From contig NC_133620.1 of the NCBI RefSeq assembly GCF_048593235.1, forward strand, positions 28,987,772 through 29,051,771: a stretch of 64,000 nt of DNA, in the 5' to 3' direction. The DNA comes from Sminthopsis crassicaudata (taxonomy: Eukaryota). Below, one piece after another: positions 9,661-57,312 of this stretch; position 1 is the first letter of the stretch; each line of letters opens with the position of its first letter. The notes under the pieces were generated by a model. That model ran no database searches. It saw only the letters and a list, made by a program, of their open reading frames with translations, and was not told the origin of the DNA. The position numbers were made by a program, and so were the translations under genes.

Positions 9661-10920
9661 CTGTGTGAAACCAGTTTGCAAAGGGCGGGGATAGGGCATG
9701 AATTCATGCCAAACACATCCCTCCTTTCAGTAAGAAAGAAGGCTTTTGCAATGGGCACAGGGTGAGTTTGCCACAGGGCACAGGGGTTTTGCAGTGCTAG
9801 CCGGGGCTCAGTGGCTCACCTCGCCTTTGCTTCAGGTGGAGGGAAGCCCGGCCTCCAACCTTGGTCCGGCCTCCCTCACCAGTGGGCAGCAGTGGGCACA
9901 GCTGGGAAGAATCTTGCCTTTCTCCCCATCTTGAACTCTGCCCCCATTCTCCCTAACCCAGTGCTGCCAGACCTCCTCCTGTTCTGGGCCTGAGGTTCTC
10001 GGGCTGCAAAGGCTTCTGGAAACCTCCAAGGAACTGCGTCCTCTTAGCCAGGGGGACAGCAGAAGCTCACTTAAGATCTGCAATGGTCCCGGCTAGCTCC
10101 TCTGAAGGGCTCAGAATAAGTCCTTAAATGCGAAGGTCTGGGCTAGCTCCTCTGAGTGATAATATCTCATTATCTCATTAGCACTTAGTAAGAACCTAAC
10201 AAAGATCCCCTGGGAAAACGATGTCATTGCTGCCTTCTGGCTTTGTAGCAGTTGTTCCCCAGCCCGCCATGGAGCTCTTCCTTATGGTAAAAGCCAAAAT
10301 AGCCGCCACAGAAAGTTCATCCAACAGTATGTGCAGGATTGCTCCCCGCTGGCCCCCCACCTCTGCAGTGAGAAAGGAAGGCTATCCCTAGCTCTCCTCT
10401 GGAACCTTCAACTACTACGCCCAGCTCCAGGCCCCAGTGACCTTTCCCAGAGGCCTCTGAGTGGTGCTATAGTGCACTCAAATGTGGCTCCAGACACTGA
10501 TTAGCAGTGGAAGGAGAAGGGCAGCCAGTGGGGAGGGCTTGGCAGGTTTTCCAGCCTGGATGAGCCTCCTCTGCTTTGTTCAGGTTCCTGCTACACGGTC
10601 CTAGCCAGCCCTTTCATTCCCGCAGGGAGCCTCCCAGCGGGACAAATCCCCCCAGCCCACCCCGGTGGAAACCTCTGCTGGGGCAGGGAGAGGGAAAGGT
10701 GCTGGCCCAGAGCCTCATTTGGGTTTTGAGCCCAGGACTTCCATGTTACTGCCTGCAGGCCGTGCACCCAAGTGCCGGAAAATAGGAGGTGTGTCCCAGC
10801 GGGCTGGACTCAATGGGATTTCCCGGGAGATTCTGAATTGGTCAGGAGCGCTTCTCTGTGGTCTTTACTAGTGGACAATTCTTATGAAATTGAAATTGGG
10901 GCAAGTCGGTGCCCGGGAAT

Positions 10921-11100
10921 AGAGCACCAGTCCTGGGGGCAGGAAGACCGAGTTCATTCAAATCTGGCCTCAGACACTTCCTATCTGTGTGACCCTAGCT
11001 AAGTCACCAAAATTCTGTCTCATCTGTAAATGAGCTGGAGAAGGAAGTGATAAATCACATGGCTTTGCCAAGAAAACTCCAAATGGGCTCACAAATCAGA
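10921..11100 (+). mobile_element. MIR/MAR1-type CORE-SINE
   Basis: GTTCAAATC-like B-box region, core TGTGTGACC..CTCATCTGTAAA, and tail GGAGAAGGAA..TTTGCCAAGAAAACTCCAAATGGG. Confidence 0.65.
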
Positions 11101-11134
11101 CTCTTAGGCTGTATATATGTCTATTCCTCTATTA

Positions 11135-11278
11135 TTTTTGTACTGAGGCAACTGGGGTTAAGTGACTTGCCCAGGGTCACACAGCTAGGAAATATTAAGT
11201 GTCTTAGGCTGGATTTGAACTCGAGTTCTCCTAACTTCAGGGTGTGATGCTCCATCCACTGTGCCACCTAACTGCCCC
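11135..11278 (-). mobile_element. Marsupial CORE-SINE (WSINE/MAR-like)
   Basis: GAGGCAACTGGGGTTAAGTGACTTGCCCAGGGTCACACAGCTAG..GGATTTGAACTC..CCACTGTGCCACCTAACTGCCCC. A near-identical core recurs at about 12490-12600 and 28230-28270. Confidence 0.75.
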
Positions 11279-12644
11279 TTGTCAAAGAAAATGCCATTGT
11301 GAAACAGACTGTCGCACGATTGAACCTCCACATCTGGTGCCAATGGCTCTCATCATTTGGTGTGCTGACAGTAAAACTCATCACTCTAGATAATAATTCA
11401 CTATAGCAGATAATGAACTTGATATATCCTAGATCAAAGAATAATCCTTTAAAATAATAATTAGGGACAGTTGGCTGTGTGACCCTGGGTAAGTCACTTA
11501 ACTCCAATTTTCTCGGCAAAAACAAACAAAAAAAGGTAGTTTATATAGAAGTTACAGACAAAATAAAAAGGTAAAATAGGCACCAGGAGAGGTAAAGATG
11601 AAAGAGCTGGGAGAGCTGGGAGTTAACAAGAAAAGTGTTTTTCACAATTAAGAGTGGGAGTCAAGTTCCCTAGTGCACGGCACAATGACTCAGGAGAAAG
11701 GGAATACTCGGAGCTGGAGTGTGGCATTGATTGGCTATAGGAAGGCGAAAGATCCCTAGAGGCGTGGGGGCGGAGGAGAGGAGTGAAAGGACAACTGGAG
11801 GTGGGGTGAGAGAAAGATACCCTGGGGCCTGGGATGGATTTATGGGGCAACTTTAACTTTGCATCTGATTGAATACAGTTAAAGTGAGATTAGCCAAGAC
11901 CTCTCCCTGGGGGTGGGACTGGAAGATTATGCTAATCCCCAGTGCCCTTCCCTGCTTGCCTTGGGGAGTAATCTCTGCAGTCCTGGCTTTCCCACTGAGA
12001 GGCCAGGACCTCCGGGAACAGTTGGAACTCTGGGAACATCCACAGGCTCGTGCATCTTGCCTAATTTGGCCACCACCCTCCTCTTTTAGTTTCCCCAAAG
12101 AGTGCGCGTGTCCTTCTCTAACTTGGGGTTGCCAAGTCCATAAGCCCACTTTAGTCACTTTCTAATTGCCAGCTGCCACCCAGAAAAGAAGGTCGTTCAT
12201 GCAGCAGGAGAGCTGGCTTCCCACAGGCCTTCAGCACGGACTGGCTCTCACCATCCCTGCCCACTTGCACGGAAGTGAAACCGAAGGGGCTTTCATTTGC
12301 CCTTCTCTTCCCATAGCCATCTGGGCCTTGGCGGCAAAACCGTTATTTTGTCCCTTTTGATTAAGGGTCCCTTCGTGTTGACAGCCCTAAGTATGAGGGG
12401 AGCCAGACTTTTATCAGTGACATCAGGTGCAAGTTTTTTTCTGTTCCATTCAGAATTATCAGTGACTAAATTAGCTTTTCTTTCTCCTGATGCAATTGGG
12501 GTTAAGTGACTTGCCCAGGGTCACATAGCTAGGAAGTTTTAAGTGTCTGAGGTCAAATTTGAACTCAGATCCTCCCGACTTCAGGGCTGTCCACTGCGCT
12601 TTTCTAATGTCTAGACACCATTTAGGCGAAACCTATTAGTTTTA

Positions 12645-27379: not shown

Positions 27380-27610
27380 CCTTTTTTTTTGTTCTTATTC
27401 AGTCATGTTGGACTCTTTGGGACCCCATTTGGGGTTTTGTGGGCGGAAATCCTGGCATGGTTGGCGTTTCCTTCTCTAGCCCATTTTACAGATGAGGAAA
27501 CTGAGGCACACAGGGTGCCGTGACTTGCTCTGGGTCACACAGCTAGGAAGAGTCTGAGGATGCAGCAAGCTCCCCTGACTCCAGCTCTGGCGCTGCAGCC
27601 TGCACCACCC
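27380..27610 (-). mobile_element. MAR1/MIR-type SINE
   Basis: TCAGTCATGTTGGACTCTTTGGGACCCCATTTGGGGTTTT..CCATTTTACAGATGAGGAAACTGAGGCA..GTGACTTGC..GGGTCACACAGCTAG. Confidence 0.75.
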
Positions 27611-28531
27611 AGCCTCCTTGGCCTCACTTTCCGCTTCACTCCAGCACCTCTGAGCAGGTGTGTTTGGAACCAAAGCCAGCGCCCTCATTTTACAGATGAG
27701 AACACTGAGGCTCAGAACAGGAGGGCCTCTCTGGGCTCCCGGGGGAAGGCCTAGGGCCTGTGGCTCTGCAGTCTCACCAGGCGGCCCTCCCAGAGCCGGG
27801 CTCAGAAGCTGGGGCCGGAATGGAAGCTTCTCAAGGGCAAGCCCGAGTTCCTTTTCTTTGTTTTATTTTCCCTGGTGACATGGGAAAACATCTCTCTTTT
27901 GTTATAATGTACATTTATCTTTTAAAAAATTGTATTTTCCTATGATTCACGTTGGGAGAAAAAAATCAGCACAAAAGGAAAAACCCAGAAGAAAACGGCG
28001 AATATCGCGTGTGTGATTCACGGTCAGTCTCTGTAGTTCTCCCTCTGGATGCAGACGGCCCTTCCCTCCAAAAGGCAGGGGGATGGCCTGGCTCACTCAC
28101 CCGCCGGGGAGAAGCAAGTCTGTCTTAGCTGGCTATCCCACAGGCCGGCTGCGGCGGACCATGAGATGCTTTCCTGCCGGTTTTGTTCAGCATTTCAGCA
28201 TTAGTTCATGTAAATCTTTTTTTCCCTGAGGCAATTGGGGTTAAGTGACTTGCCCAGGGTCACACAGCCAGGAGTCTGGCTTTTCTAAAATCAGCCCACC
28301 CATAATTTTTTATAGAAGAATGAGATTCCATCACTTTCATATTCAGCCATTCCCCAATTGATGGGCGTCTGTGAGCCATTTCTTAGTGTTTACCTCTTTA
28401 AGGTCTTAACACGGGTAGTGCCTTGTACCCAGTAAGTGTCTAATTAGTGCTTATTGAATGAATGGGAGTAGAGGGGGGCTCTCTCTCTCCCAGCCCCCCT
28501 AAGACCTGTCACCTCTGTTCTCCAGGCAGGG

Positions 28532-31907: not shown

Positions 31908-33452
31908 CTCGGCTGCCTACAGCTGCCTCACGGTCCGCTTGGGGGCTTTCAGGGGGCTGAGGGGGACCCCCACTGCAAGTGGGGCTGGGAGGGAGGCAGG
32001 TGTCCTGGGACGTGTGGGGGGGAATGTATGTGGGGCAGTGCGAGTGGGAGAACGGGAGGGGCCATACCCATAGGGGATCAGAGGGAGGCTGGGGGGGGGG
32101 CTTCCTGGAGGAGGCAGCCTGAGGGCCCCTGAGAGGGTTGGGAGGAGCCCAAGGTCATGGGTGACTGAGGACCCAGCCCTCTCCTCCCCCGACTTGCAGC
32201 AGTGGGGCTGTCCCCTAACCAGGGGCCCCTTTGGTGACTTTCTGGGGAGAAATAGGTCCTGCCCCTTAGGGAACCCCCCGCAGCCCCAGCCTGGCTCCCC
32301 CGCCCCAAGCCCTCCCGGGGTGGTCCCTCTGGGACAGAAGACTGGCCTAGAGCTCCGAGGGCCACGCTCGGGTCTCACCATGGGGCTCAGGCTCTCAGCC
32401 CTGATGTTTTAAGGCTTGCTCTGCCCTCAGCCACAGGTGGGAGATGGGGAGGACCAGTATGCCATGAGAAGACTGTGGGGGCTCTCGGCGGGAGCAGGAA
32501 TGCCACAGCAACATCCCTGACAAGCCTCCCCTTGAATACCTCTAGGGACAGGGAGCTCACTACCTCACCTCAAGGTAGCCCAATAGCTGGGGGTCAGCTC
32601 TCATTGCCAGGAAGCTGCCTGTGTACTCTTCCCCCCCCCCCCGGGGGGTTCCCTGGGGCCAAGTAGACGGGGCTAGACCGCCTCCTGGCGAGGACCCTTT
32701 GTGACCCTTGAAGGCGGATCTCAGGGTGTGAAAGAGACTGGTTTTGCACAGATGGCCAGGGTTCGAATCCTGCCTGACTCCTGGGTGCTCCTTCCCGGCC
32801 CAATTTCCTCTGCAGAATGAGCCGGGTTGGGTTCAGCGGGCTCCCGAGCTCTGAACCTCTCCAGGGGCAGCCCCTGCCCTTGAGCCCAGGCTTGGTCCCA
32901 GGCCCTAAAAACCCTCCATTCACTTCAACAAGCTTGTGCTCGCCGGCACCACCTTGTGGCCAAACATGCATCCTCAACAAAGGCAGGGGAATAGGCATTT
33001 ATTAAGCACCTACTGTGTACCAGACTCTGTCCCGAGCCCTCCTGGCCCAGGAAGCAGGTGCTCTGATTATCCCCATTCTACAGATGAGGAAACTGAGGTA
33101 GCAGAGGTGGAGGAGCTTGCCCAAGCAGGCCTCCCTGACTCCCAGGCCAGCTTAGGGGCTTTGGGGAGGGGCCTTTCCCACAACTTCCCTGAGAGAGACC
33201 TCTCAGACCCAACCTCGAGGCCCCACAAGGGGGCCCTCTCCCAGACATGCTCCCCCTCCCTTCTCTAATCTTCCTCCCCCAGACACCCACCACCCTGCCC
33301 CCACCCAGCCTCCTCCCTCTGTCTGCAGGGGACCCCCAGTGAGTCGGCTCTGGGTGGGGAGCCCCCCTGCTGAGCTCAGGCCTCTGGAGGTGGGGGGGAG
33401 GTGGGGTTGATGGGGCTTCCAAGTGAGGGGGGGCCGGGCCAGGCTTCTAGAC

Positions 33453-33458
33453 TTTATT
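33453..33458 (-). terminator. UROD polyadenylation signal
   Basis: TTTATT on plus, about 95 nt beyond the UROD stop. Confidence 0.75.
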
Positions 33459-33552
33459 CTCTTAAAAACAGATTTTCTCGCAGACATTCTCTGGTCGGGG
33501 GCGGGCGGGGGGGGACACCTGAGACCAGTCCTGGGGGGCGGCAGGGGCAGGG

Positions 33553-36489
33553 TCACTTGCGCCGGAGCTGGCGGGAGTGCCGGTGCACGGCCTCCACGAA
33601 GGCCCCGACATGGGCAGGGTCCATGTCCGGGTAGATCCCGTGGCCGAGGTTGGCGATGTGGGGCTGGGGCCCGAAGGCGTCCAGCATGCGTTCCACCAGC
33701 TGCCCGATCCGGTCCTGGGGGGGGAGTGAGGGAGGTCAGGCGGGCTCGGGGGCCAGGCGGCCCACTGTGGTCAGTCCCCCCCTCCCTTGTTTCTCCTACC
33801 TCGGAGGCGTAGAGGGCGCAGGGGTCCAGGTTGCCCTGCAGGGTCACTGACTTTCCAACACGTTCCCTGAAAGGAGCCCTCAGTCAATAACGTTTACCAC
33901 AAGTCCATTCCCGGGGTCCCCCCCCATCCACCCTGCAGGGGCCTCCCACTCAGGAAGCCTCAGGAAGTCCCTGGAAGATAGCACCCATGTTACCCATGGA
34001 GGGACCTGGTGGGGGTCCCGCTGTCCATCTGGGGCCTTGCACCTGGCCCCGGGCTCCCCACTCACCGGGCCAGTGCAGGGTCCACTTTCCAGTCGATTCC
34101 AACCACTTCATACCCAGACTGGGCCAACTCCTCCAGGGCATAGTGGCCGTCCTTGGCAAAGATGATCTGGGCGGGCGTGGGGGCGGCAGTCAGTCTCTGT
34201 GGTCGGCCCCCACCTTCCCTGCCTACCCCTCCCCCACCTGTCCTCCCCCCCCCCCCCTCAGTGTTTCGTTCACATGGGACCTTACCAAGGGCACTGGCGC
34301 CAAGCCCGCCTCCCGCAGACCAGCCTTGACCCTCTTGGCCACGTCACGGATGTAAGGCAGCGCAAACTCAGAGAAGAGCTCGGGACCCAGGTGGCCGGCA
34401 TGAGACTCAAACACCTGCAGGGCCTGAGGGGGGACAGGAGTCGAAGGTTAGAGGTCAGAAGTTGGGGGGTGCCCAGAGCCACGAGCCTCCTTTCCTGGCC
34501 CTCACCTGTGCCCCTGCGGCCACCTGGCCCACAAGGTAGGGGACGAGGACATCGGTCAGCAGGCCCAGCAGCCGGTGACTGGCCTTGGGCCACTGGTAGA
34601 GCCAGCGCTTGGCCTGGGCCATGGTGGGGGAGCCGCCGCCCTCCACCATGTAGGACATCAGCGTCCAGGGGGCTCCTGAGAAGCCGATGAGGGGCACGCG
34701 CCCCTCCAGCCGCTGGCGCGTCAGCGTGATGGCCTGGAACACGTAGCCCAACTCTTGGTCCACGTCCACGGGGGTCTGGAGGCGGTCCAGGTCCTGCTCC
34801 TCCCGCAGGGGTGCCGAGAAGGTGGGCCCCTTGCCAGGGACCATGGTCACCTGCAGGCCCAGAGCCTGGGGGACGGGGGGGCCTGAGTCTGAGGCCAGGG
34901 GCCCTTCCTCCGGTGTCCCCCCAGGACCCAGTAGCCAAGGACCCTCCCCCTCCCCCCCAGCAGACCCTGCAGCCAGGGGACCCTCCCTCCTGTCCCCTCC
35001 TCCCCCCGGCTCCTCCATACCTGAGGCACCACCAGAATGTCAGAGAAGATGATAGCAGCATCGAGGGGGAAGCGCCGGAGTGGCTGTGGGAGGACACGGG
35101 GCGTGAGCGTCTCCAGGCCTGGGCAAGGGGTCCAGGCCACCCCTGCTGAGCCCGGCTCCTGGTCCTGCCTCCTCCCCCGGCCCCCACAGGCCCAGGTTAA
35201 ACGCAGCAACGGGGAGCCCCTGGGCTCTAGGGCTCGGCCAGGCCTCCTTTATAGGAGGGGCTTTGGGGCCAGGCCTGGAGCCCTGAGCCGGCTCCTCCCG
35301 AAGCCCCCCCAGACTCCCCGGAATTCCGCCTCTGAGCCCCGCAGCCCGGGGCCTCCTCGCACTCAGAAGCTGCTTCCTCCAGGTGAGGCCCCAAGTCCTG
35401 CCACGACTCTCCCCTTTTAGAGACATAGAAACTGAGGCTGGAGGAAGAAGAGCAGGCTCTAGGGGCCTGACTCGGGTCTGAGTTCGAGTCACTCTGGGCA
35501 GGCTGGCGGACCGCAGGGCCTCAGCACGGAAGGTTGGGCCTGCGGAGCGGGGGCCGGATCCGGGAGGAGTCGGGGACTTCTGCGGGTCTGGCCTCTGTGG
35601 GCCCCTCACCTGCAGGGTCAGCTCGCAGCAGGCCTCGGGGGAGCGGCAGGTGCTGAAGAAGTCCTGGCCGGCCCTGGTATCCAAGAACTCTGGGGAGGGG
35701 AGGGCGTTAGGGGGGCTCCTGCCCCCCCCCTCCCCCACTCTCCCCCCCCCCACTCGGCCCCCCCTTGCCCGGGCCCCTTACCCTTCAGGTAGCGGCCGGC
35801 CTGGCGCATGCACCACACGGGCGTGTAGTCGGTGGCCTCCCCCCAGGCCGCCCGCAGGAAGGTGTCGTTCTGCAGCTTGGGGAAGGCCTGGCCTCGGTCC
35901 CCGCCTGGGCCGCCATCAGGGCTCCTGGGGCTGCTGCTGCTGCTGGGGGCGGGGGGGAAGCGGGAGGGCCTCAGGCGGGGCGCCCCACCCCCCTTATCAG
36001 CCCTGGCCAGGCCCTGTCTCAGCCTCCCCCCCCCAGCCAGGAGGCCCGGCCCTGACCCCCCACCCCATCCAACCCCTGCTTGGACGGGCCCTGGGGGCCA
36101 GGATAGAAGAGGCTTGGGGGGGAGGGCAGGGGCCCTGAGTACTGAGCCCAAAGGGGGGCTATCCTGGGGGAGGGGAACAGGGCCAAGTGCCAAGGCCAGG
36201 ACCAAGGTGGGGGGGCTCTCCTGGGGAAAGGGGAGGGGGGCCCTGAGTGCCACAGCCGGCGCCATGGGGGTGTCCTGGGGGTGGGATGAGTGCCAAGACC
36301 AGGACCAAGTGAGGGAGCTATCCTGGGGGAGGGGGCCCCGAGTGCCGAGCCAAAGTTTGAGGGGTTCCGGGGAGGACAGGGGGAAGCCAGGGCCAAGGGG
36401 GGTGTCCTGGGGGGAGCCCAAGGGGCTCTGAGTGCCGGAGCCGGGACGAGGGGCAGCGACTGGACTCACCTCAGGCTGGCCTCCTCCAT
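33553..36489 (-). CDS. UROD: Uroporphyrinogen decarboxylase, 9 coding exons (about 383 aa)
   Basis: Exons (minus): 36489-36470, 35942-35782 (acceptor ambiguous among tandem CAGs), 35689-35610, 35083-35021, 34865-34506, 34423-34286, 34166-34066, 33866-33800, 33714-33553. Motifs: [87 protein letters not shown]. Confidence 0.97.
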
Positions 36490-36640
36490 CGCGTGGACCC
36501 CACTTACTTCTGAGGAGTCTAGAGCAGCCCCGGCCTCCTCCGGAAGCCCTGCCTCCGGCTTTGTCCCCGCCCCGGTCCCGCCCCCGCACCGCCCCGGTCC
36601 CGCCCCACGCCGCTGCTGGGCGTCGCCATGTTGATATCAC
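36490..36640 (-). promoter_or_regulatory. UROD proximal promoter (GC boxes, YY1-like motif)
   Basis: Duplicated GGGGCGGGACCGGGGCGG GC-box array at about 36560-36606, and CAACATGGCG (YY1-like) around 36629 on the minus strand. Confidence 0.55.
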
Positions 36641-37699
36641 ATGACAGGCCGGGCTTAGGCTCTCGGGAGCCGGGACTGCCCGGCTCGGTGCCTGCAGGAC
36701 CCCTGTGCTACCGTAAAGTGCAGAGCAGAGACGCAGTGTAAGATCCCAGGGGAGGAGGGGCGAGGTCCCCCATCACCCGGGACCGGAGTTGGCCGAGACT
36801 CAGGAGACGGCCTGCTTAGCGCCTCCCAGCGAAGCAGCCTCGGAGCGCCATCGTTACCGCCCCGGGATCTCAGTTTCCTCATCTGTAAAATGGGGCTCAT
36901 GGGTCGCGTCTTGCCTCTGGCCGCATTTGCAGCTGTTGGCCGGGTTCTTCCCCCGCTCATTTTAACTGAGACAGACCGTGACTGGCCCAGGGGCCCCGGC
37001 AGCGTCGAGGCCGAATCTGAACTCGGGCCTCCCGACGTTAGCAGCGGTGTCCCGCCGGCTCCCCCTCCACTTCGCCGGGCCTGGGAGCCGCTGTTCTCGG
37101 CGGGAGACCCTTGCAGCCGGGCCCCGTGGGAGTCTCCCGGCCCTCTCTTTGGTCATCCGCTTCCTGCTAAGGGCAGGGAAGGCTGCAGGAAGAAAGAGCC
37201 GGGAGTGGGAAGGGACCGAGCGCGGAGGCTCCCGGGAAACCCAGTAGTAGCTGCGGCCCGCAGGGCCAACGAACATTTACTGCGCGCTCACAGCCGGCCG
37301 GGGCCGGCCCGCAGCGGGGAACGCAGAAACGAGCGAAAACAACCGCCCGGCCCTCGAGAGGCTTACATTCTAATGGGGGAGGGGAGATAACCCCGCCCAA
37401 TGGGGCTGTTGAGGGGTGGGGGAGGGGAGAACCGGAGCGATGTCCAGGGAAGAAGGCCCTGGTGAGCAATGAGGAGGGGCTGCCCAGGCCCCTCCTGGAG
37501 TGAAGAGGGCAGACGCTGATGAAACCTGGGGCAGAAGCGACCTGGCACCCCGAAAAGCTTTCTGGGGCAGAAGAGGGCCTCCTGCAGGGGACAGAGGGGG
37601 CCTGGAGCAGACCAGTCCCGGAGGAGCCAGTGCCAGGGTGGAGATGGGAGCCATGCAGTGGGTCCGAGGCAGTCCTGAACCCCAAGTGTCTCTTTTTTA

Positions 37700-54779: not shown

Positions 54780-55010
54780 CGTGGCCAAAGGAGATCTCTC
54801 ATGTGTCCTAGTCTTTGGGACCTCTTTTAGGGTTTTCTCTACAATTACTGGAGTGGCTTGCCATTTCCTTCTCCAGTTCCTTTCACAGCTGAGGAAACTG
54901 AGGCAAATGGGTGAGTGACTTTCTAGGGCTCACCTGACCTGAGATGGCTGTTAACTTAGGACTTCCTGATTACGTGCCCTCTGCACTGTGCTATCTAGCA
55001 GCATAGCCGA
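54780..55010 (-). mobile_element. MAR1/MIR-type SINE
   Basis: GGAGTGGCTTGCCATTTCCTTCTCCAG..GAGGAAACTGAGGCAAA..GTGACTT..CACTGTGC. Confidence 0.65.
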
Positions 55011-57083: not shown

Positions 57084-57312
57084 AGGGGGCAGCTCAGTGG
57101 CACAGTAGACAGAGCAATGATACCGAACTTAGGAAAAGCTGCGTTCAAATTTGATCTCAGACACTTACTAGCTATTACCTCGGGCAAATCACTTCATCCA
57201 GTTTGCCTCAATTTCCTTATCTGTAAAATGAGCTGGAGAAGGAAATGTCAAGTCTCTCCAGCATCTTTACCAAGAACACCCCAAATGAGATCTGAATAAG
57301 ACACAACTGAAG
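57084..57312 (+). mobile_element. Near full-length MAR1-type CORE-SINE
   Basis: GGGGCAGCTCAGTGGCACAGTAGACAGAGCA (A box), GTTCAAAT (B box), core, then GGAGAAGGAAATG..CCAAGAACACCCCAAATG..ACACAACTGAA. Confidence 0.8.

What the first reader, a model, noticed from the sequence alone, without database searches (positions are those of the whole stretch)
34506..34865. UROD exons 5 and 6 are precisely fused (intron absent)
Seen: one 360-nt exon reads ..[14 protein letters not shown].. with no intron. Established (from memory): human UROD has exon 5 (198 nt, ending GAP) and exon 6 (162 nt, starting WTL); 198+162=360. Every other internal exon downstream of exon 2 here matches the human length I recall (80, 63, 138, 101, 67, 162). 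Precise intron loss is rare in mammals and suggests recombination with a reverse-transcribed cDNA.
Basis: partly seen in the sequence, partly recalled or inferred. Interest (0 to 1): 0.7.

Follow-up and report, generated by a model that had tools for sequence, protein, structure and literature searches.

The report
Old marsupial UROD intron loss
The fat-tailed dunnart's haem-synthesis gene UROD really lacks one short intron that platypus, deer and alligator keep, but devil, koala and monito del monte lack it too, so it is an old, ordinary intron loss in marsupials.

Summary
Window 34506-34865 (minus strand) is one 360-nt exon with AG/GT borders. It encodes residues 93-212 of human UROD without a gap.

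The window is Sminthopsis crassicaudata. RefSeq UROD isoforms X1 and X2 map onto it residue for residue, with 9 coding exons.

Polarity is settled:
- Platypus, Reeves' muntjac and American alligator all have 10 coding exons (20-23/113/80/63/198/162/138/101/67/162).
- Each has a phase-0 intron exactly at GAP|WTL, of 97, 102 and 589 bp.
- The absence is therefore a loss, not a placental gain.

The loss is exact to the base. It is not special to the dunnart or to dasyurids. Tasmanian devil, koala and Dromiciops carry the same fused exon. It therefore predates the common ancestor of Australidelphia.

Opossum DNA could not be fetched. Marsupial stem versus Australidelphian stem stays open.

The mechanism is not shown:
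- Exactness, a roughly 100-bp ancestral intron and a housekeeping gene fit cDNA-mediated loss.
- The loss is single and mid-gene, so two classical predictions of that model are not met.

No paper on this loss was found, although public gene models already show it. The raw-read check was not possible. Interest is low.

The parts
34506..34865 (-). Fused UROD coding exon (360 nt), equal to exons 5 (198 nt) and 6 (162 nt) of other amniotes. Phase 0 at both ends.
   Evidence: RefSeq XP_074122186/XP_074122185 map onto it exactly.
34667..34668 (-). Site of the lost intron, between codons CCC (Pro) and TGG (Trp) of ..GGA GCC CCC|TGG ACG CTG.. . No base is added or missing.
   Evidence: junction compared with platypus, alligator and muntjac exon ends; intron at GAP|WTL, phase 0.
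34866..35020 (-). Retained intron 4 (155 nt, gtatgg...ccccag).
34424..34505 (-). Retained intron downstream of the fused exon (82 nt, gtgagg...cctcag), orthologous to intron 6 of other amniotes.
36470..36489 (-). UROD coding exon 1 (20 nt, MEEASL + 2 nt).
35782..35942 (-). Coding exon 2 (161 or 158 nt through a NAGNAG acceptor at 35942/35939). About 45 nt longer at its 5' end than the 113-nt exon 2 of non-marsupials.
35610..35689 (-). Coding exon 3 (80 nt).
35021..35083 (-). Coding exon 4 (63 nt).
34286..34423 (-). Coding exon of 138 nt (exon 7 in the 10-exon numbering).
34066..34166 (-). Coding exon of 101 nt (exon 8).
33800..33866 (-). Coding exon of 67 nt (exon 9).
33553..33714 (-). Last coding exon (159 nt plus stop TGA; exon 10).

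Best explanation
This is the functional, orthologous UROD (uroporphyrinogen decarboxylase) gene of the fat-tailed dunnart. Intron 5 of the ancestral amniote gene lay between the codons for Pro158 and Trp159 in human numbering. It was in phase 0 and was probably about 100 bp long in early mammals. It was deleted exactly, leaving one 360-nt exon.

The deletion happened once. It came after the marsupial lineage split from placentals and before the last common ancestor of Australidelphia. It was then inherited by dasyurids, koala and Dromiciops.

Shown here: the absence of the intron, the exactness of the loss, the polarity (a loss) and the sharing among four Australidelphian species.

Inferred: a single event, by parsimony. 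The most likely mechanism is gene conversion of a short tract, with both end points inside the 198-nt and 162-nt exons, by a reverse-transcribed spliced UROD mRNA in the germ line. I put this at about 55% given that the loss is real. Exact genomic deletion or double-strand-break repair makes up the rest. The protein is unchanged by the event, so no functional consequence is expected beyond one splice fewer.
For: - Exon and borders.
- Identity as UROD residues 93-212, without a gap.
- RefSeq S. crassicaudata proteins map 100% onto the window with 9 coding exons.
- Intron present at the same codon boundary and phase in platypus (97 bp), alligator (589 bp) and muntjac (102 bp), with all other exon lengths identical.
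- Same fused exon in devil (359 nt, with a 1-nt homopolymer gap in that assembly), koala (360 or 378 nt) and Dromiciops (360 nt).
- Junction identical codon for codon, and at most 1 nt of microhomology between intron ends and exon ends in the outgroups.
- Flanks of devil, koala and Dromiciops are colinear with the window on both sides of the gene.
- Models of intron loss and their predictions: PMC3652778.
Against: - Absence of the intron rests on assemblies and RefSeq models.
- For the cDNA mechanism, only one intron is lost, both neighbours are retained, and the site is mid-gene (474 of 1104 coding nt from the start in the 10-exon form). Neither adjacent loss nor 3' bias is seen.
- An event more than 60 million years old leaves no trace that could separate the mechanisms.
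- Didelphid genomes were not readable, so the branch is bracketed, not fixed.
Confidence: 0.92

Rival explanations
1. The intron was gained in other lineages (for example placentals), and its absence in marsupials is the ancestral state.
For: Kordis 2011 (PMC3257199) argues for intron gain in the placental ancestor, but in domesticated genes. UROD is not mentioned there.
Against: A monotreme, a placental and a crocodilian have the intron at the identical codon boundary and phase, with identical flanking exon lengths of 198 and 162. Gain would need three independent insertions at one site.
Confidence: 0.01
2. It is an assembly or annotation artefact, for example cDNA contamination or a collapsed region in the dunnart assembly.
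For: No read-level check was possible. The devil assembly does carry a 1-nt error in this very exon.
Against: Four independent assemblies of four species show the same fused exon. All eight other introns are retained at orthologous positions, and the flanks are colinear.
Confidence: 0.01
3. The marsupial gene is a semi-processed retrocopy that replaced the original UROD at a new locus.
For: One intron is missing exactly, as in retrocopies.
Against: Eight of nine ancestral introns are kept in the same positions and phases. Marsupial loci are colinear with one another. I did not verify the outgroup neighbour (the HECT-domain gene seen next to alligator UROD) in the window.
Confidence: 0.01
4. 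The loss is real but arose by exact genomic deletion or end-joining repair of a double-strand break, not through cDNA.
For: - The loss is single and mid-gene, with both neighbouring introns kept.
- PMC3652778 notes that end-joining repair can delete introns precisely and would also favour germline-transcribed genes.
- The intron was short, about 100 bp in platypus and muntjac.
Against: Only 0-1 nt of microhomology exists between the intron ends and the exon ends in the outgroups. Simple deletions are more often inexact (PMC3652778). An exact, in-frame removal of a whole intron is the signature expected of a spliced template.
Confidence: 0.4

Closest known systems
Lineage-specific precise intron losses in mammalian housekeeping genes (surveys by Roy et al. 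2003 and Coulombe-Huntington & Majewski 2007, as cited in PMC3257199; Zhu & Niu 2013, PMC3652778)
   Same: Exact removal of one short intron from a broadly expressed, conserved gene. The protein is unchanged, the neighbouring introns are retained, and the loss is shared by a clade.
   Different: - It lies on the marsupial branch, which those surveys used at most as an outgroup (opossum in PMC3652778).
- It is mid-gene rather than 3'-biased.
- This particular gene and intron were not found in the papers searched.
UROD of placentals, monotremes and sauropsids (10 coding exons)
   Same: Same exon borders and phases everywhere else: 80, 63, 138, 101, 67 and 162 nt. The protein is 79-83% identical over the fused exon.
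   Different: Exons 5 and 6 are one exon. Coding exon 2 is 45-60 nt longer in marsupials, which adds a Ser/Pro-rich N-terminal stretch.
Processed or semi-processed retrogenes
   Same: They lack introns exactly at the splice junctions.
   Different: Here only one of nine introns is missing, and the gene sits in its colinear marsupial locus.

Membership tests
Precise evolutionary intron loss | An orthologous intron is present at the same position and phase in outgroups that bracket the lineage. | tested here: met
   Platypus 97 bp, muntjac 102 bp and alligator 589 bp, all phase 0 at GAP|WTL.
Precise evolutionary intron loss | Removal is exact, with no coding bases gained or lost. | tested here: met
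   360 = 198 + 162. The protein alignment has no gap and the junction codons are identical.
Precise evolutionary intron loss | The gene is the orthologue, is intact, and keeps its other introns. | tested here: met
   Eight other introns are at conserved positions. The reading frame is complete and equals the RefSeq protein. Marsupial flanks are colinear. Expression was not tested.
Precise evolutionary intron loss | The absence is real in the genome (read-level support). | tested here: inconclusive
Four independent assemblies agree.
Reverse-transcriptase (cDNA recombination) model of intron loss | Exact deletion at the splice junctions. | tested here: met
Reverse-transcriptase (cDNA recombination) model of intron loss | Adjacent introns are lost together. 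| tested here: not met
   Introns 4 and 6 are retained (155 and 82 nt).
Reverse-transcriptase (cDNA recombination) model of intron loss | Bias towards the 3' side of the gene. | tested here: not met
   The lost intron lay after coding nt 474 of 1104 in the platypus and muntjac structure.
Reverse-transcriptase (cDNA recombination) model of intron loss | Germline or housekeeping expression of the gene. | not testable with these tools
   UROD is a haem-biosynthesis enzyme needed in all cells (established knowledge). No expression data were laid here.
Reverse-transcriptase (cDNA recombination) model of intron loss | The parent gene also spawns processed pseudogenes in the same lineage (PMC3652778). 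| not tested
   Whole marsupial genomes cannot be searched with these tools.
Processed or semi-processed retrogene | Most or all introns are absent, the locus is new, and there is a poly-A remnant. | tested here: not met
   Eight of nine introns are retained and the flanks are colinear among marsupials.

The most novel reading that the evidence does not exclude
American opossums (Didelphimorphia), and perhaps shrew opossums, may still keep intron 5. The loss would then be a clean rare genomic change that marks Australidelphia alone. It would be an independent, homoplasy-poor character for the grouping of South American Dromiciops with the Australian marsupials. By branch length, the marsupial stem is several times longer than the Australidelphian stem, so this is the less likely placement.
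Probability: 0.15. Interest if true: 0.3.

Novelty: new member of a known kind. Interest (0 to 1): 0.2.

Why it matters
It adds one well-polarised, exact intron loss to the short list known in mammals, on the little-surveyed marsupial branch. It could serve as a presence/absence character for marsupial systematics once opossums are checked. It changes nothing about the enzyme, and the phenomenon is well known. RefSeq gene models of these marsupials already show nine coding exons, so the value is that of a documented example and not of a discovery.

Tried and rejected
- The look-up of encoding contigs gave no DNA for opossum, wombat and Gracilinanus because the assembly files are too large.
- The look-up of encoding contigs found no record for non-longest isoforms: sugar glider X3, bilby X2 and Pteropus alecto X2.
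- The third word search, with the 120-residue exon, aimed at open-frame fragments from short marsupial DNA contigs. It returned only distant eukaryotic and microbial UROD fragments, at most 73% identical.
- Paper searches for UROD with 'intron loss', 'exon 6' or '10 exons' gave nothing relevant. Coulombe-Huntington & Majewski 2007 is not held.
- A tblastx check for the HECT-domain neighbour of alligator UROD in the window gave no clear hit. I did not pursue it.
- Rejected readings: placental gain, assembly artefact and retrocopy (see the rival explanations).

Full report
**Observation.** The gene lies on the minus strand. Window 34506-34865 is a 360-nt open stretch. It is preceded by ...cccccag (AG at 34867-34866 on the minus strand) and followed by gtgagg (GT at 34505-34504). 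It translates to 120 residues that include ..[16 protein letters not shown]... These residues align end to end, without a gap, to residues 93-212 of human uroporphyrinogen decarboxylase chains in the Protein Data Bank (E 8.5e-60). They also match positions 80-200 of Pfam URO-D (E 2.2e-42).

**Whose gene it is.** The exon translation is 100% identical to RefSeq UROD isoform X2 of Sminthopsis crassicaudata (P0272). I mapped the two RefSeq isoforms (382 and 383 residues) onto the window with a small exact-match and GT/AG script. Every residue is accounted for by nine coding exons:

| Coding exon | Window coordinates | Length (nt) |
|---|---|---|
| 1 | 36489-36470 | 20 |
| 2 | 35942 or 35939 to 35782 | 161 or 158 |
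| 3 | 35689-35610 | 80 |
| 4 | 35083-35021 | 63 |
| 5+6 fused | 34865-34506 | 360 |
| 7 | 34423-34286 | 138 |
| 8 | 34166-34066 | 101 |
| 9 | 33866-33800 | 67 |
| 10 | 33714-33553 | 159 + stop |

The window is thus the fat-tailed dunnart, and the public gene model has the same fused exon.

Searches used the single exon by reference or database proteins. Exon borders were checked only inside the script, by translating across one junction at a time against the database protein.

**Polarity.** The same script was run on loci fetched for three outgroups.

| Species | Locus | Coding exons (nt) | Intron at GAP\|WTL |
|---|---|---|---|
| Platypus | L001 | 20/113/80/63/198/162/138/101/67/162 | phase 0, 97 bp |
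| American alligator | L002 | 23/113/80/63/198/162/138/101/67/162 | phase 0, 589 bp |
| Reeves' muntjac (a placental) | L006 | 20/113/80/63/198/162/138/101/67/159 + stop | phase 0, 102 bp |

A monotreme, a placental and a sauropsid thus share the intron at the same codon boundary. The intron is ancestral for amniotes, and its absence here is a loss.

**Exactness.** At the junction the dunnart reads GGA GCC CCC|TGG ACG CTG. The outgroups read GGN GCN CCN|gt...ag|TGG ACN CTN. No base is added or missing. In the outgroups the intron ends and exon ends share at most one base of microhomology (a final G).

**Age.**

| Species | Locus | Fused exon |
|---|---|---|
| Tasmanian devil | L003 | 359 nt |
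| Koala | L004 | 360 nt, or 378 nt with an alternative acceptor |
| Dromiciops gliroides | L005 | 360 nt |

- In all three, the other eight introns are in place.
- The devil assembly lacks one G of a five-G run 8 nt upstream of the old junction. The annotation patches this with a 2-nt pseudo-intron and flags the product as a low-quality protein.
- The flanks of these three loci align colinearly with the window on both sides of the gene.
- The loss is therefore shared by Dasyuromorphia, Diprotodontia and Microbiotheria.
- By parsimony it happened once, before the crown of Australidelphia and after the split from placentals. In round figures from general knowledge, that is between about 160 and about 65 million years ago.
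- Opossum, Gracilinanus and wombat DNA could not be fetched because their files are too large. Whether didelphids share the loss is unresolved.
- By branch length, the marsupial stem is the likelier place.

**Artefact and retrocopy.** Four independent assemblies agree. Eight of nine introns are retained and the loci are colinear. This excludes cDNA contamination, a collapsed assembly or a retrocopy for practical purposes.

**Mechanism.** PMC3652778 sets out three models:
- Recombination with a reverse-transcribed spliced mRNA. This gives precise loss and predicts adjacent losses, 3' bias, and germline or housekeeping expression.
- Simple genomic deletion, which is usually inexact.
- End-joining repair of double-strand breaks, which can be exact.

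The evidence here divides as follows:
- The loss is exact. The ancestral intron was short, about 100 bp in both platypus and muntjac. The gene is a housekeeping haem-synthesis enzyme (established knowledge). All of this fits the cDNA route.
- Only one intron is gone. It lies after coding nt 474 of 1104, and both neighbours remain. Any conversion tract must therefore have ended inside the 198-nt and 162-nt exons.
- Two classical predictions of the cDNA route are thus not met.

I rate the cDNA route at about 55% and exact deletion or repair at about 40%. An event this old cannot be resolved from sequence.

**Comparison with what is known, and novelty.** Precise losses of short introns in conserved mammalian genes are a described phenomenon. 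Papers found here cite surveys of it (PMC3257199, PMC3652778). No paper found here mentions UROD. The marsupial RefSeq models, however, already show nine coding exons. It has no expected effect on the protein. It could serve as a rare genomic character for marsupial systematics once didelphids are examined.

**Verdict.**
- Observation: confirmed.
- Interpretation as a loss: supported.
- Mechanism: unproven.
- Interest: low (0.2).

Noticed in passing
window 35895-35942 (minus strand); L003-L005 exon 2: All marsupial UROD proteins seen, including opossum, carry a 15-21-residue Ser/Pro-rich insertion after residue 6. Platypus, muntjac and alligator lack it. It is encoded by a 5' extension of coding exon 2 (158-173 nt against 113 nt). 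Unlike the intron loss, this is shown to be shared with didelphids. Its function is unknown.
   Followed up: partly
window 35939-35942: A tandem (NAGNAG) acceptor at coding exon 2 accounts for RefSeq isoforms X1 and X2, which differ by one serine. Similar one-residue isoform pairs are listed for several other marsupials.
   Followed up: partly
L003 about 2765 (Tasmanian devil, GCA_048593225.1): One G of a five-G run is missing 8 nt upstream of the old exon 5/6 junction. The annotation bridges it with a 2-nt pseudo-intron and flags a low-quality protein. This is most likely a homopolymer error of the assembly.
   Followed up: partly
window 32000-37500; L003-L006: G+C of the UROD locus is very high in dasyurids (devil 0.73; dunnart 0.60-0.74 in 500-nt bins). 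It is 0.61 in koala, 0.58 in Dromiciops and 0.51 in muntjac. All dunnart UROD introns are short (82-530 nt).
   Followed up: no
window 27392-27559, 57103-57287, 10919-11093, 11132-11261, 12476-12589, 28217-28273, 54812-54933: The upstream flanks of koala and Dromiciops UROD hit a dispersed repeat at many places in the window, at 75-92% identity. It is presumably a marsupial SINE.
   Followed up: no
L002 1-1571 (alligator): A gene with ANAPC10 and HECT domains lies head to head with alligator UROD. A quick tblastx did not find its counterpart next to UROD in the window, so synteny on that side was not established.
   Followed up: partly
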